Assembly: GCF_902652985.1 (NCBI RefSeq)
Contig: NC_047023.1
Location: 32,488,001-32,552,000, forward strand
DNA length: 64,000 bases
Direction of reading: 5' to 3'
Source of the DNA: Pecten maximus
Lineage: Eukaryota
The position numbers and the translations under genes are program-made. The notes under the pieces were generated by a model. That model saw only the letters and a program-made list of their open reading frames with translations, had not been told where the DNA came from and searched no databases. Below are positions 3,505-9,795 of the stretch, one piece after another (positions within the stretch are counted from its first letter, which is position 1; each line of letters opens with the position of its first letter).

Positions 3505-3825
3505 CACTTTTGGCCTTTGGGTTCGCTCCTGTGAGGGAGGTTCTGGGTTTTGTCCCCTGGACATTATATACCAGAGTTAACAAAAAACCATAGTTGCTAT
3601 TCCTGCTTATAGTTCAGCACATAGGGATTGGGACCACCCCGTTGTCAGTATTATGTAGGCGCCTGCTTCGTCAGTGTGCATTAGTTAGGTAACACGACAA
3701 AGTCGACACCAGTTCCGCATCATCACAAGGAGGCAAAAAACAATATTACACTTAATTCGCAGGGAGGCCATCCTTAAACGATCATTAATTGCTGTTGATA
3801 AGACGTTTAACATATTAAAAACACA
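3505..3825 (+). mobile_element. tRNA-derived SINE, Meta-domain-like
   Basis: Degenerate Pol III head, central tagttgctattcctgcttatagttcagcac block, and a gctgttgataagacgtttaac + A-rich tail. Resembles molluscan Meta-SINEs; recognised from memory, not searched. Confidence 0.5.
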
Positions 3826-4398
3826 AATTTCTAAAATAAATTGTATCTAAATATCAAAGTTCAATGTTTAACATTATGCTCCACACCACTCTGACCTCTG
3901 CTGTGTTGGAAATTCAAAGTACGTTTATTACAAAGCTTTCGTGTAGTCACTTATATCGTGCCGATTTAACATAATTACGCTGTTCTGCTTGGAGACATAC
4001 AGGAATATAATGGAATACGCCAATTCTATAATGTCAGTAAGGCTGCTGCCACTGTAGGCAATCAGTCCCTTTGTAAACGTTGATTAGATGCATCAGCTGT
4101 TCTTGGCTGGTGGCGTCTTGTAATTCGAAATTGGCTTAAACCTGAATTCAATCAATATTGCTTTAAAAGCTAAATAATGTTTTATACTAAATTTTGATTC
4201 CCAATGAAATATATCAAATTGTTCAGATTTAATTCGTCAGTAGAATTAGTCTGCCTGTCGGAGGTAGAAATGGCCTCTTTGCATGTCTAAAACGGCACGT
4301 GATGCAGTGGAGCTGTTTTTAAGCTTCCCGTATGAGAAGGGAGACAACCTCAACATATCGTTCTACTTGATTCAGTACGACTTAAAGGATTATATATA

Positions 4399-4868
4399 TG
4401 TAACAGAGCGCATGATCAATTAAATTTAAATCACTGCCTCCGCTAGGGATCGAACCCGGGACCTCTGGCTTACTAGTCCTACGCTCAACCGATCGAGCTA
4501 AAGAGAAGATCTCTCTAGCCGAGCGGTATATTGCGGCTAGTATTTACCAGGGTTACATACTCCCCCTCCAGGAAAGAACTCGTCCTCGAGTTTCCAGGGG
4601 TAACAGCGATGCTTTCACAAGCAGCGATGAGTATCATTCCCGAGTCCCTACATGGGCGCCAATGTAACAGAGCACATGATCAATTAAATTTAAATCACTG
4701 CCTCCGCTAGGGATCGAACCCAGGGACCTCTGGCTTACTAGTCTTACGCTCAACCGATCGAGCTAAAGAGAAGATCTCTCTAGCCGAGCGGTATATTGCG
4801 GCTAGTATTTACCTGGGTTACATACTCCCCCTCCAGGAAAGAACTCGTCCTCGAGTTTCCAGGAGTAA
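4399..4868 (-). mobile_element. Tandem TRIM (mini LTR retrotransposon) with tRNA-containing LTRs, Helenus-type
   Basis: Two near-identical 159/160-bp LTRs (4399-4557, 4663-4822) bounded by TGTAAC...GTTACA. The 105-bp internal region has a minus-strand PBS TGGCGCCCATGTAGGGACTCG (4641-4661, tRNA-Lys-like) and PPT GGAGGGGGAGTA (4558-4569). A second PPT plus partial internal region lies at 4823-4868. Each LTR holds a tRNA-like segment with A box TAGCTCGATCGG and B box GGTTCGATCC. Confidence 0.88.
4435..4507 (-). pseudogene. tRNA-Thr-derived sequence inside the TRIM LTR (also ~4699-4772 on - and 8508-8580 on +)
   Basis: TCTCTTTAGCTCGATCGGTTGAGCGTAGGACTAGTAAGCCAGAGGTCCCGGGTTCGATCCCTAGCGGAGGCA. A/B boxes intact and AGT in the anticodon position, but the acceptor and anticodon stems mispair. 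Confidence 0.75.
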
Positions 4869-4869
4869 A

Positions 4870-7800
4870 CTATATTTACAGGAGAGGGGGAACGTAGTGA
4901 TACCACCAAACCGACAGGTTGACATTAGCTGCCGTGTTGATAAGGAGATGCCTTATCCTGAGGTGTGTGCAGTGATACACGCCGCACCCAACTCAGTCCT
5001 TACAGATGATTTGGATATCTCTCCAGGGGTATTCACATACAAGTACAGGAGAAATGGAGTCGTTAACGTCAGCATTATTATCCAATATCACGACCCGGAC
5101 AGTCGTTGTGCCACCGCGCGCATTAGTTTGCCAGCTGCAACCTGTTACCGTGTGCAGTTTGTTGACCCCAAAGGACGCGGATAGAGAAGGGAGCCAAACA
5201 CCAGATGTACTGGAGCAATTTACTTTCTCTCCGATCCTGGATGACGCTTACCTACGCCAATGCAAGGAGGTAATCGGGGAATACCTAGATGTTTCTCTCA
5301 AGGAGAATTGGACTTGGGGCACACCAAGGCATTTAAACACCGTATAGAGTTAGACGATGACCGCCCTTTCAAACAGCGCCATCGAAGGATACCACCTGGG
5401 ATGGTACAGGAGGTTAGGGACCACCTCTAACAGCTTTTAGCTTGCGGGGTTATCAGAAAGTCGTACTCCCCTTGGGCGTCCGGAGTGGTGTTGGCACGCA
5501 AGAAGGATGGGAAGCTGCGGATGTGCATTGATTACCGGCAATTGAACAATAGGACTATTAAGGACTCGTACGCCCTACCACGGATTGAGGAAATCCTGGA
5601 CTCCTTGTCCGGTGCCAGGTACTTCTCCGTGCTCGATATGAAGAGCGGGTACCATCAAGTTGAAGTCGAGGAAGAACACAAAGAGAGAACCGCCTTTACC
5701 GTTGGACCCCTAGGGTTATACGAGTACAATAGGTTGCCGTTGGGGTTAGCCAACGCACCCGCAACGTATCAACGGTTAATGGAACAGTGTCTGGGGGAAC
5801 TTCATATGGTCGACTGCTTCATATATTTAGATGACGTAATAATTTTTGCGAAGACTTTTGAAGAACACATGGAGAAGCTGACCAGAGTGTTGGATAGGCT
5901 ACGTCTTCACGGGATTAAGCTATCACCGAAGAAATGCAACTTCTTCCAGCAGCGGGTGAAATATCTCGGTTTTATTGTGAGCGAGAAGGGGATAGAGGCT
6001 GACCCTGAGAAAATTTCTAAGGTGACATCGTGGAAAACACCAACCTGTCCGGAGGATGTACGCCGCTTTTTAGGGTTCGCAGGGTAATATCGAAAATTCA
6101 TCAAGGATTTCGCGAAGATCGCCAGACCTCTTACTGACCTTATGCCCGCCCCAAAGAAAGCTAAAAAGGGGGCCGATAAGAAGACTTGGGACTGGGGAGA
6201 GAAACAGGAGATTGCTTTTACCCTGCTTAAAGACGCCCTTTCTTCACCACCAGTACTGGCTTATCCTGATTATAGGAAACCTTTTGAGCTTCGTACCGAC
6301 ACAAGTCAACAGGGGCTTGGTGCCGTTTTGTATCAACAACATGAAGATGGACACAAGGTCCTTGCCTACGCCAGCAGGGGTTTGTCTCACTCAGAGAGGA
6401 ATTATCCAGCCCATAAACTGGAGTTCCTGGCACTGAAGTGGGCGGTAACGGAGAAATTTCGTGATTACTTGTATCAACATAAGTTCACGGTACTTACAGA
6501 CAACAATCCCTTGACCTACGTACTAACCAGTGCTACATTGGATGCCACCGGACATAGATGGTTGGCAGCCCTGTCGGCGTACGATTTCACCATCAGGTAC
6601 AGGCCTGGGAAGTCCAACATCGATGCCGATATCCTGTCAAGGCTACCCACAAAGGAGGAATTTTAGCGGTTATCTGTACCGAGGGAGTCCGTGGTAGCTG
6701 TATGCCAGATGACGCAGGCACAGCCCCACGCCAACAGTTTGCAGCTGAACGCTACTACTCCGGCGCCTGTCACGCCCGATCTGGATGACATAATTCAACA
6801 AGATTTGAAGACTGCCCAGGAAAGGGATCCAGTATTGGGACCATGTCTGGAGGTCATATCCAGTGGCCGTAAGCCCACGAAGGAGACCATGCCTTTTGCA
6901 GCTTGGGACCCGCAACTATACCGTCAGTATAGTTAGTTGAAAGTCGAGCAGGGAATCTTGTACAGAGAGGTTAAAAGTGACGAGGGACAGAAGAAACAAC
7001 TGGTTCTACCACGTGAGTTAGTCAACTTCGTCCTCCACAGCTTGCACAACCAGATGGGACATCTTGGGATTAGCCGTACCACCTCGCTATGCAGAGATAG
7101 ATTCTACTGGCCGTCCATGAGGGTTGATATCGAGCAATGGGTCGCCAGGTTGTCCAAGATGTCTTCGAAGGAAAACTCCTACCAACGAGCGAGCCCCTAT
7201 GGTATCCATATCAACTACCCAACCTTTGGAACTAGTCAGTATGGATTTCCTGACATTGGAACCATCAAAAGGGAATTACCAGCACATCTTAGTGATGACA
7301 GACCACTTCACCAGGTATGCTGTAGCGGTGCCGACTAAGAATCAAACATCCAAAACCACAGCCGATGCCTTCTTCAATCACTTTATTGTCCATTATGGGA
7401 TGCTGCAAAGGATACACTCCGATCAGGGTGCTACCTTCCAGAGTAACCTCATGCAGGAATTGTACAAGCTTGCTGGGATCGACCAATCGAGGACCACCCC
7501 GTACCACCCTCAAGGGAATGGCCAATGCGAGCGATTTAATAGAACTCTGTTGAGCATGCTCGGTACCCCGGAGAAGGATCAGAAGAAAGACTGGAAGGCG
7601 TACGTCGCATCACTAGTGCATGCCTACAATGCCACCAGGAACGACGTCACAGGGTTTTCACCCTTCTACCTGATGTTCGGGAGGGAGCCCCGCCTACCCA
7701 TAGATCTGTCCTTTAACATCGGGAGGGATATCGGAGAATCAGTCTCCTCCACCAAGTATGTTGAAGATCTGAGGAAGAGGCTCCATTCATCGTACGATAT

Positions 7801-8442
7801 AGCCATATCCAACATCACTCCAGCGCAACAACGTCAGAAGGGTGGTTATGACCGCCGGGTGCGTGGAGCGTGTCTCAGCATTGGAGATCGCGTCTTCGTG
7901 AAAATTGTAGCTTTTGAGGGCAAGCACAAGCTAGCCGATAAATGGGAGGAGGAGGTGTATACTGTGCTCGAACAGCCAAATGCGGATATGCCAGTCTATG
8001 TGGTGAGGAAGGAGAATGGGGAAGGCAGGAAAAGGACACTTCACCGGAACCTCCTTTTACCCGTGGGATTCCTTGACAGCTCTTCTAAGCCCGACAACGT
8101 GACACAACCGAAACCGAAGCCAAGACCGGTACCCAAACCCCGTCTCAGGCGCCAGCTTCCACCGCCACAGAGCCCATCTGTGGATGACCGGACTGAGAGC
8201 GAGGCCAGTGATAGCGACGGAGAAGGTGGTTACTGGGTGACGGTACCTCCAATGATACAGGATCAACCCGACACTCCTGAGAGTGTTGATGAAGGGGATG
8301 CTGAGGATACCGACCGCGAGTCGACAACGGTCGGAACCAATGTAGGATCTGAAGCCGACGAAATTGGAGTCGAGGCTGAAGAATCTGAAGCCAGTGGAGG
8401 GGAGGTGGACGACCATCGGACCGCAGTTCAAGATGACCAGTC
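4870..8442 (+). mobile_element. Decayed Ty3/Gypsy pol fragment (PR-RT linker, RT, RNase H, integrase)
   Basis: RT motifs LRMCIDYRQLN and YLDD (5824-5835). RNase H TDTS...LEFLALKWAV...TDNNPL. Integrase H-H-C-C zinc finger and MDF...HSDQG...CERFNRTL. In-frame stops at 5428, 6085, 6664 and 6934; frameshifts near 5075, 5300 and 7145. gag/protease and the 3' LTR are missing. Confidence 0.95.
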
Positions 8443-8468
8443 AAGGAACCCGATAAAACCCTCATACC

Positions 8469-8616
8469 TAAATACTAGCCGCAATATACCGCTCGGCTAG
8501 AGAGATCTTCTCTTTAGCTCGATCGGTTGAACGTAAGACTAGTAAGCCAGAGGTCCCGGGTTCGATCCCTAGCGGAGGCAGTGATTTAAATTTAATTTAT
8601 CATGCGCTCTGTTACA
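8469..8616 (+). mobile_element. Third TRIM LTR copy, inverted relative to 4399-4868 and slightly 5'-truncated
   Basis: Reverse complement of the 4399-4557 LTR with only a few substitutions. It ends in GTTACA at 8616 and lacks the first ~11 nt. Confidence 0.9.
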
Positions 8617-9437
8617 TGGGCGCCAATGTGAAGGTATGAGGGTTTTATCGGGTTCCTTCCGTCATCCAAATTGCCAAGACCCAACACATTGTCAGAGTTT
8701 CAATACTTTATTTGGTATTGTGGAGTTTCTGGGGTAGAATAAATCCCCTGTAATAAGACATGGATAAAACTAATAAAACATTATACAAACGAATGCACCA
8801 CACATCTTAGCAGCAAGAACTAACAACAACACGTTCTGACCCGGGACGGAAATAAAGATAATTAGACTGGATAATATAAATTAGATATGATACTCCAATA
8901 ATTTATAGGATATAAGCAATAATCATAAAGCTAAAACTATTCACTCATCCTGCATGTGGTGCTGGGGGACCCAGTATAAAATATATAGTAATTATGTATC
9001 ATGTACCTGTCAGATGTGGTTCGCTCCACGGCCAGCTGAGAAGTGCCGGGAGAGAGCAGAAAGGAAAGAAAGAAGGAAAGAGCGCGGGAAAACAAAGCGA
9101 GTCCCACGAGCTGTCCGTGGTCAGTCATGATTAGTCGAGTACAGTCAACACATGATGGACAAACACAATACACCACGTCACACACGTATACAAAGGTAAA
9201 AACGAAGGTACATCAGGTGATCACAAATACACCGAAACGGATCACGGATTGGTTTACGGATCGGATCGCGGATTCACGGAATACGTATATGCTACATACC
9301 GGGGGGGTATACACATAACAAGCTTAGATAAAACTGGCAACAATTTAATATCAGAAACAATAAAACGAGGAATATATATATGATACAAAAAATCTACATG
9401 GATATCATCGAAACATTATAATACACATGTGTCCGTC
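8617..9437 (-). mobile_element. Gypsy-type 5' LTR followed by PBS (distal boundary uncertain)
   Basis: The minus strand reads AATAAA ...~80 nt... CCTTCACA|TTGGCGCCCA, i.e. an LTR end (CA, 8627) abutting a tRNA-Lys PBS (8617-8626). The TG start of the LTR could not be fixed. Confidence 0.65.
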
Positions 9438-9795
9438 AAGAGTCGACATAGTTTAAACATATTTTTATTGAAAAATTCAATAGGAATTGGACACAAGTTA
9501 TTCAACTTATATATCGTCCTTTTCCATATACAAGTATGAGATGATATATACAATGGCAGCAATTACATATGTATAATGAATGATGATAACATGTATACGT
9601 ATATATAAAAGAAACACAACATTAATTATTATAGGTGACAAGAAATAATACACTTGACATACCAGTACCCATAATTTATATAGAAAGTAAGCTTTCCATT
9701 ACATGGCGTTTTGTATACATATTATTAGATATATACTATAATTATATAGCTGAAGATATAAATACACTGTACTATAAGTCATGAAAATTAAACCA

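What the first reader, a model, noticed from the sequence alone, without database searches (positions are those of the whole stretch)
4399..9437. Chimeric TRIM/Gypsy element joined at a shared tRNA-Lys primer-binding site: candidate autonomous helper of a Pol III-driven mini-retrotransposon
Seen: read on the minus strand, the locus is Gypsy-type LTR end - PBS - [inverted block: Gypsy pol, 27 bp of that same LTR end, TRIM LTR] - TRIM internal - PPT - LTR - PBS - internal - PPT - LTR. The long LTR and the TRIM are followed by the same PBS start, TTGGCGCCCATGTA. The right junction falls exactly in this quasi-palindromic ACAT(T/G)GGCGCC(C/A)ATGT site. Established: TRIMs are non-autonomous, and tRNA-LTR TRIMs (Helenus) have been described and are presumed to borrow an autonomous LTR element's enzymes. 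Inference: this is one mosaic cDNA made by template switching between co-packaged TRIM and Gypsy RNAs, physically linking the parasite to its helper family.
Basis: partly seen in the sequence, partly recalled or inferred. Interest (0 to 1): 0.82.

Follow-up and report, generated by a model that had tools for sequence, protein, structure and literature searches.

The report
Scallop mini-retrotransposon fused to Gypsy helper
This locus is a decayed patchwork of a tiny non-coding retrotransposon (a Helenus-type TRIM) and one Ty3/Gypsy family, and six more such fusions elsewhere in the genome, five of them inserted as single units, point to that Gypsy family as the TRIM's likely helper.

Summary
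The Gypsy LTR is 670 bp (8627-9296), not 811 bp. The shared primer-binding stretch is 13 nt. A 12-nt filler lies at 4869-4880.

The TRIM is 423 bp with a tRNA-Thr-like LTR and at least 2,000 copies. The 8.1-kb Gypsy family has LTR pairs 99.6-100% identical. Both use tRNA-Lys(UUU), make 4-bp target duplications and have similar LTR tips. The window's pol and LTR belong to this one Gypsy family.

Of 12 Gypsy LTR ends in a 5'-LTR-like context genome-wide, 5 are canonical and 7 are joined to the TRIM. Five of those 7 have perfect 4-bp target duplications around the whole composite, so they integrated as mosaic cDNAs.

The window's right junction recurs at two such loci. It is a head-to-head join in the 16-nt quasi-palindrome formed by the LTR end plus the primer-binding site. 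The Gypsy part there is exactly one LTR, as plus-strand strong-stop DNA would be.

The window copy itself has no target duplication (TATA versus TACC). It is about 2% decayed, and its three inner junctions could not be checked with reads. The helper link is therefore supported mainly by other loci. "One mosaic cDNA" here is unproven, and Pol III drive is untested.

The parts
4395..4398 (.). Left host flank TATA. The left flank sequence is single-copy.
4399..4562 (-). TRIM LTR, the 3'-most copy, 164 nt. It contains a degenerate tRNA-Thr(AGT)-like stretch at 4435-4507.
4563..4662 (-). TRIM internal region. It runs from the primer-binding site (21 nt complementary to tRNA-Lys-UUU) to the polypurine tract.
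4663..4822 (-). TRIM LTR, middle copy, about 97% identical to the first.
4823..4868 (-). Last 44-46 nt of another TRIM internal region, including the polypurine tract. It is of the second TRIM subfamily type.
4869..4880 (.). 12-nt filler that matches neither element.
4881..8442 (+). Gypsy pol fragment, positions 3579-7134 of an 8.1-kb natural copy. It carries RT, RNase H, the integrase zinc domain and the integrase core. It is broken by several stops and frameshifts and has 68 private differences in 3518 columns.
8443..8468 (+). 26-27 nt from the U5 end of the Gypsy LTR, lacking the last 6 nt. It is the exact inverted copy of 8633-8658.
8469..8616 (+). TRIM LTR from nt 12 to its end, inverted relative to the tandem TRIM on the left.
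8614..8629 (.). 16-nt quasi-palindrome (14/16 self-complementary). It consists of the TRIM LTR end, the 12-nt tRNA-Lys primer-binding site read on the minus strand (8614-8625), a spacer, and the Gypsy LTR end. This is the head-to-head junction.
8627..9296 (-). One complete Gypsy LTR, 670 bp, 98-98.7% identical to most other copies. Its outer tip is flush with host DNA.
9297..9300 (.). Right host flank TACC. It does not match the left flank.

Best explanation
The locus is an old, decayed mosaic of two retroelements that replicate together. One is a 423-bp Helenus-type TRIM. The other is a young Ty3/Gypsy family that most likely supplies its particles, reverse transcriptase and integrase.

Shown:
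- Both elements prime on tRNA-Lys(UUU).
- Both make 4-bp target duplications.
- They are fused at seven loci, five of which were integrated as single composite cDNAs.

Inferred mechanism for the right junction (8614-8629):
- Plus-strand strong-stop DNA of the Gypsy element is one LTR plus a copy of the primer-binding site.
- Its 3' end annealed, through the quasi-palindromic LTR-end and primer-site 16-mer, to the same site on a TRIM plus strand.
- It was then extended, giving a head-to-head join.

The other junctions are at 4868/4881, 8442/8443 and 8468/8469. They are either further microhomology template switches in the same reverse-transcription event or later DNA rearrangement.
For: Same Gypsy family: intact copies carry both the window's LTR and its pol, with 318 bp between the pol match and the 3' LTR.

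Shared replication features:
- Shared 13-nt site and 4-bp duplications in four intact Gypsy copies.
- 4-bp duplications in 11 of 15 canonical TRIMs.
- The primer is tRNA-Lys(TTT), with 17 genes carrying the matching 3' end.

Census of Gypsy LTR ends (plus L022): 5 canonical, 3 joined to the TRIM internal region, 3 joined head-to-head to a TRIM LTR, 1 joined end-to-start, and 10 next to host DNA.

Composite target duplications:
- TGAA in L017.
- TATC in L018 and CTAC in L020.
- ACTG in L027 and CATG in L028.

Head-to-head joints:
- The Gypsy part is exactly one LTR in L018, L027 and the window.
- Both versions of the two mismatched palindrome bases occur.
- A TRIM-TRIM head-to-head joint of the same build exists at L054.
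- Searched from the TRIM side, the only head-to-head partners found are this Gypsy family and the TRIM itself. At least two other Gypsy families use the same primer site.

Patchwork: L028 shows four short pieces joined at 3-7 nt microhomologies inside one target duplication.

Timing: the young TRIM subfamily (many copies 99-100% alike) and the Gypsy LTR pairs (99.6-100% identical) point to activity at the same time.
Against: - The window composite has no target duplication (TATA versus TACC).
- Its three inner junctions are unique in the assembly, and no listed contig from four public runs bridges them.
- The head-to-head joins could also form between free cDNAs in the nucleus by annealing of single-stranded primer-site tails. 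That would need joint activity but not co-packaging (Li et al. 2022, PMC11042837).
- A copy of 18 nt of the tRNA would leave a 6-nt unpaired 3' flap in the proposed pairing. Why only 12-13 nt are kept is not explained.
- Only one TRIM-TRIM joint was found, although the TRIM is far more abundant than the Gypsy family.
Confidence: 0.6

Rival explanations
1. One reading: the whole of 4399-9296 is one mosaic cDNA made in one particle and inserted once by integrase.
For: - Both outer ends are exact LTR tips: the Gypsy U3 start at 9296 and the TRIM U5 end at 4399.
- Five other composites were demonstrably inserted as units.
- L028 shows that multi-switch patchworks are made.
Against: The flanks are TATA and TACC, only 2 of 4 alike, while all five other complete composites have perfect 4-bp duplications. 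Two changes in a 4-bp repeat are unlikely at about 2% decay.
Confidence: 0.2
2. Post-integration DNA rearrangement. A Gypsy copy and TRIM copies inserted separately or as a simpler composite. Later inversion and deletions between inverted TRIM LTRs or the palindromic primer sites produced the present order.
For: - No target duplication.
- Inverted TRIM LTR arms of 149 nt flank the pol block.
- The copy is older than the family's recent burst (68 private differences), which gives time for rearrangement.
Against: - A single inversion does not restore a normal element. Extra deletions at 4868/4881, 8442/8443 and 8468/8469 are still needed.
- No internal TRIM target duplications are present.
- The right junction is base-for-base the one seen in L018, where a composite target duplication shows it formed before integration.
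Confidence: 0.25
3. Integrase-independent capture. TRIM cDNA with a single-stranded primer-site tail annealed to the primer site of a resident genomic Gypsy copy and was joined by host repair, as shown for Tf1 in fission yeast. No co-packaging would be needed.
For: - That pathway targets primer-site homology and pre-existing related elements, makes tandem elements and leaves no target duplication (PMC11042837).
- This locus has no duplication and contains a tandem TRIM.
Against: - It does not explain the inverted pol block or the 26-nt U5 piece.
- It does not explain why the Gypsy part right of the joint is exactly one LTR ending flush with host DNA.
- It cannot explain the five composites that carry outer target duplications.
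Confidence: 0.1
4. Assembly artefact: repeats of two abundant families were mis-joined by the assembler.
For: - The inner junctions are unique in the assembly and were not bridged by listed short-read contigs.
- TRIM copies are very abundant.
Against: - Window-specific pol variants are present in an independent run at single-copy depth (X1 record 5).
- Both outer junctions are reached by contigs from the flanks.
- The right junction type exists at two other loci.
Confidence: 0.05

Closest known systems
Helenus (TRIMp3) non-autonomous LTR retrotransposons of pteriomorph bivalves (Kojima 2024, PMC10886601)
   Same: Short LTR-internal-LTR element with a tRNA-like stretch and A and B boxes in the LTR, a tRNA-Lys primer site, a polypurine tract and 4-bp target duplications. 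The paper reports Helenus from Pectinida and notes that bivalve Helenus LTRs often look like tRNA-Thr.
   Different: That paper proposes Gypsy partners only from primer-site similarity and states that how the dependence is maintained is unknown. Here a specific Gypsy family is physically fused to the TRIM at seven loci. At least two other Gypsy families with the same primer site were not found as partners in the head-to-head joints, the only junction type that could be searched for any partner.
Dasheng/RIRE2 chimeric elements of rice (Jiang et al. 2002, as summarised in PMC5473765)
   Same: [quoted passage not shown]
   Different: Dasheng and RIRE2 share LTR sequence. Here the LTRs are unrelated apart from their tips, and the joins sit at the primer site, including inverted head-to-head joins.
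Complex LTR elements made by template switching (Sabot and Schulman 2007, PMC1950507)
   Same: Two parent sequences are fused during reverse transcription and inserted as one daughter element.
   Different: Those are large plant elements sharing an LTR in direct orientation. Here the partners are a 423-bp parasite and an 8.1-kb Gypsy element, and one class is inverted through a palindromic primer site.
Integrase-independent insertion of Tf1 at primer-site homology (Li et al. 2022, PMC11042837)
   Same: Single-stranded primer-site tails of cDNA act as recombination handles. Tandem elements arise.
   Different: That pathway joins cDNA to genomic copies without target duplications. Five composites here have outer 4-bp duplications, so the joining came before integrase action.

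Membership tests
Helenus / TRIMp3 | Two short LTRs around a non-coding internal region, with the whole element under 1 kb | tested here: met
   Canonical copies are 423-424 bp, with LTRs of about 160-164 nt and an internal region of 100 nt.
Helenus / TRIMp3 | Primer-binding site complementary to a tRNA 3' end next to the 5' LTR, and a polypurine tract before the 3' LTR | tested here: met
   21 nt are complementary to tRNA-Lys(TTT) plus CCA. A purine run sits 2 nt before the LTR.
Helenus / TRIMp3 | tRNA-derived sequence with Pol III A and B boxes inside the LTR | tested here: inconclusive
   The Rfam tRNA model aligns end to end at 16.4 bits, below the gathering score of 29. ARAGORN calls no tRNA. 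The A-box-like and B-box motifs are present 45 nt apart, and no T4 run occurs in the element.
Helenus / TRIMp3 | 4-bp target duplication (animal Helenus) | tested here: met
   11 of 15 canonical copies are perfect, and two more differ by one base.
Helenus / TRIMp3 | Transcription by RNA polymerase III | not testable with these tools
   No RNA data were laid.
Ty3/Gypsy LTR retrotransposon | Pol domain order of RT, RNase H, then integrase | tested here: met
   RVT_1, RT_RNaseH, Integrase_H2C2 and rve occur in that order along 5431-8440.
Ty3/Gypsy LTR retrotransposon | TG..CA LTRs, primer site, polypurine tract and a target duplication in full copies | tested here: met
   Four full copies of 7.7-8.7 kb have 4-bp duplications and LTR pairs 99.6-100% identical.
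Mosaic cDNA integrated as one unit (template-switch chimera) | One target duplication around the whole composite and none around its parts | tested here: not met
   In the window the flanks are TATA and TACC. The feature is met at five other loci: L017, L018, L020, L027 and L028.
Mosaic cDNA integrated as one unit (template-switch chimera) | Junctions at shared or microhomologous sequence between the two parents | tested here: met
   The right junction lies in the shared 13-nt site within the 16-nt quasi-palindrome. The other junctions share 0-1 nt.

The most novel reading that the evidence does not exclude
The LTR end plus the tRNA-Lys primer site forms a 16-nt quasi-palindrome. This lets plus-strand strong-stop DNA of one element prime on the plus strand of another in the same particle. 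The product is an inverted-LTR chimera that integrase can insert. Such head-to-head joints would be a previously undescribed by-product of reverse transcription. They would also be a genomic fingerprint that assigns a specific autonomous helper to a Helenus-type parasite.
Probability: 0.4. Interest if true: 0.7.

Novelty: new variant of a known kind. Interest (0 to 1): 0.6.

Why it matters
Helper elements of TRIMs, and of the tRNA-promoter Helenus group in particular, have so far been guessed from primer-site similarity. That similarity is not specific: at least three Gypsy families in this genome use the same tRNA-Lys site.

Composite insertions with a single target duplication are a record of two elements' replication intermediates meeting before integration. 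They single out one young Gypsy family as the partner.

The recurrent inverted joints suggest a simple sequence reason, a palindromic primer site, for a class of aberrant but integrable cDNAs. The same signature could be searched for in any genome to pair parasites with helpers.

Tried and rejected
- Rfam over 4300-9400 at E up to 1 found nothing. Only a search restricted to one LTR showed the weak tRNA match. ARAGORN found no tRNA in the window.
- Read support was inconclusive. Only short-read contigs were available. They stop at repeat borders or come from other Gypsy copies. None of the listed ones bridges 4868/4881, 8442/8443 or 8468/8469. This says nothing for or against these junctions.
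- The empty site could not be found. The left flank is single-copy and the right flank is single-copy up to 9448, so no paralogous uninterrupted site exists in the assembly.
- A target duplication was looked for at the corrected borders and not found.
- A single-inversion model between the inverted TRIM LTRs or the two primer sites was considered and rejected as sufficient, because three further deletions are still needed.
- Nested TRIM insertion into the Gypsy primer site was rejected, because no TRIM-sized target duplication flanks any inner TRIM piece.
- The idea that the window's right half is a duplicate of L018 was tested. The LTR tree is a star with no supported pairing, so common descent is not shown.
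- Earlier notes of the scan had nothing for this place.
Full report
**Anatomy of the window locus**

Window 4399-9296 consists of pieces of only two repeat families plus 12 unassigned bases. I call the two families T (the TRIM) and G (the Gypsy element). From left to right on the plus strand:

| Coordinates | Piece |
|---|---|
| 4399-4562 | T LTR, antisense |
| 4563-4662 | T internal region, antisense |
| 4663-4822 | T LTR, antisense |
| 4823-4868 | Last 44-46 nt of another T internal region, antisense |
| 4869-4880 | 12-nt filler |
| 4881-8442 | G pol in sense, positions 3579-7134 of a natural 8.1-kb copy |
| 8443-8468 | 26-27 nt of the U5 end of the G LTR, in sense |
| 8469-8616 | T LTR from nt 12 to its end, in sense |
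| 8617-8626 | Ten bases of primer-binding site |
| 8627-9296 | One complete G LTR, antisense |

Window 9297-9448 is single-copy, and a different repeat starts at 9449. I used a natural copy (L014) only as a ruler. I built no consensus and no repaired frame.

**The two families**

- T is 423 bp in canonical copies, with a 4-bp target duplication in 11 of 15 checked.
- T gave at least 2,080 candidate matches. A younger subfamily gave at least 634, many of them 99-100% alike over the internal region.
- The T LTR holds a degenerate tRNA-like stretch with an AGT (Thr) anticodon, a conserved B box and an A-box-like motif.
- That stretch scores 16.4 bits against the Rfam tRNA model, below the gathering score of 29. 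ARAGORN does not call it. T has no T4 run.
- These features fit Helenus as described for pteriomorph bivalves, Pectinida included (PMC10886601).
- G is a Ty3/Gypsy family. The window fragment carries RVT_1, RNase H, the integrase zinc domain and the integrase core in that order. It is broken by several stops and frameshifts.
- Four full G copies are 7.7-8.7 kb, have 4-bp target duplications and have LTR pairs 99.6-100% identical. Some keep long uninterrupted gag-like and pol-like frames.
- The window's LTR and pol both belong to G. In full copies the pol match is followed by 318 bp and then this LTR.

**The primer**

Seventeen genes in the genome end with the sequence expected from the T primer site. 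They are tRNA-Lys(TTT). With CCA added, T is complementary over 21 nt and G over 12 nt. The two elements share 13 nt including the spacer. With the last three bases of either LTR, the site forms a 16-mer that is 14/16 self-complementary. At least two other Gypsy families use the same tRNA-Lys site (L055 and L057). Primer-site sharing alone therefore does not name a helper.

**Census of chimeras**

I listed every exact G LTR 3' end in the assembly together with what follows it. One variant end was added.

| What follows the G LTR end | Count | Loci |
|---|---|---|
| Host DNA | 10 | |
| Canonical G primer site and leader | 5 | |
| Class A: primer site, then T internal region | 3 | L017, L028, L022 |
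| Class B: primer site, then antisense T LTR | 3 | window, L018, L027 |
| Class C: two bases, then a sense T LTR | 1 | L020 |

Five composites have intact outer tips. All five have a perfect 4-bp duplication around the whole composite and none around the parts:

| Locus | Duplication |
|---|---|
| L017 | TGAA |
| L018 | TATC |
| L020 | CTAC |
| L027 | ACTG |
| L028 | CATG |

- L028 is a patchwork. It has 8 nt of T LTR, 38 nt of G pol, then the G polypurine tract, LTR and primer site, then the T internal region and T LTR. The pieces are joined at 3-7 nt microhomologies.
- In every class B case, the window included, the G part is exactly one LTR plus the primer site.
- The two mismatched positions of the palindrome appear in the G version in L018 and the window. 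They appear in the T version in L027.
- A T-T joint of the same build exists once (L054), with a 3-of-4 duplication in an older copy.
- Searching from the T side for any head-to-head partner returned only G and T.

**Mechanism**

Two points are established knowledge. Plus-strand strong-stop DNA is an LTR followed by a copy of the primer's 3' end, and it makes the second strand transfer by pairing at the primer site. Retroviral recombinants require both templates in one particle. The rest of this section is inference.

- Class A is what an inter-element second transfer gives. G strong-stop DNA lands on T minus-strand DNA.
- Class B follows if the 3' end of G strong-stop DNA pairs, through the quasi-palindrome, with the same site at the end of a T plus strand, and each primes on the other.
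- That pairing predicts an inverted part of exactly one LTR, two integrase-competent U3 tips, and a two-base heteroduplex that can resolve either way. All three are observed.
- Class C looks like an end-to-end join that keeps the two bases before the T LTR.
- Together with the microhomology patchworks (L017, L028), this supports T and G intermediates meeting before integration, most simply in G particles.
- Caveat: class B and C joins could also form between free cDNAs in the nucleus by annealing of single-stranded primer-site tails (PMC11042837). That would need joint activity but not co-packaging.

**The window copy itself**

- Its right junction is base-for-base the L018 junction.
- The composite has flanks TATA and TACC, so it has no target duplication.
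- Its pol carries 68 private differences in 3518 columns where three full copies agree. Full copies differ from one another by 0.7-0.8%.
- Its T LTRs differ by 3-4%, and its two T internal pieces are of different subfamilies.
- It is therefore older than the recent burst and has had time to be rearranged.
- Reads: contigs from four public runs reach 28-29 nt into the repeats from both flanks. They carry window-specific pol variants at single-copy depth. None of the listed contigs bridges the three inner junctions.
- Whether all of 4399-9296 was made in one reverse-transcription event, or a simpler composite was rearranged later, cannot be decided here.

**Comparison with what is known**

- Chimeras between a non-autonomous LTR element and its partner are known for Dasheng and RIRE2 (summarised in PMC5473765).
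- Template-switch composites are known in Triticeae (PMC1950507).
- Primer-site-guided, integrase-independent insertion is known in Tf1 (PMC11042837).
- New here are a concrete partner family for a Helenus element and the inverted head-to-head class with outer target duplications. I found no description of that class in the searches made.
- From memory, the assembly size and contig count resemble the king scallop genome. This was not checked.

**Limits**

- Counts come from one assembly and from exact-pattern searches, so they are lower bounds.
- Class A joints with other Gypsy families were not searched.
- Pol III transcription and co-packaging are untested.

Noticed in passing
window 9449-9700 and beyond: An unrelated interspersed repeat starts here. 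It gave at least 366 candidate copies at about 93-96% identity.
   Followed up: partly
L054:1084-1670 (G000 C18, about 19.583 Mb): A TRIM-TRIM head-to-head composite: a full TRIM, then the palindromic primer site, then one inverted TRIM LTR. The flanks are TATT and TATG. It is the only such joint found by exact pattern.
   Followed up: partly
L016, L027, L028, L029, L030 (Gypsy LTRs): A Gypsy LTR variant lacking about 200 bp (positions about 350-549) is shared by a full copy and by several chimeras, so a deleted-LTR lineage was also active.
   Followed up: no
L034-L037 (G000 C9, 9.90-9.92 Mb); also contigs C400, C401, C615: Clusters of tRNA genes (Lys-TTT, Gln-CTG, Arg-TCT). On the small contigs the Lys-TTT gene recurs about every 1.22 kb, which suggests tandem tRNA arrays.
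   Followed up: no
L055:about 4845 (minus strand) and L057:about 8890 (minus strand): Two other Gypsy families (65% and about 75% pol identity to the family studied) carry the same tRNA-Lys primer site. One has the identical 16-mer.
   Followed up: partly
G000 C1, 18.26-18.29 Mb (L023-L025): Three Gypsy LTRs of this family lie within 30 kb, with repeated flanking TRIM pieces. This looks like a local duplication or a complex nested array.
   Followed up: no
window 4823-4868 versus 4563-4662: The two TRIM internal pieces of the tandem belong to different subfamilies, so the tandem is itself a recombinant.
   Followed up: partly
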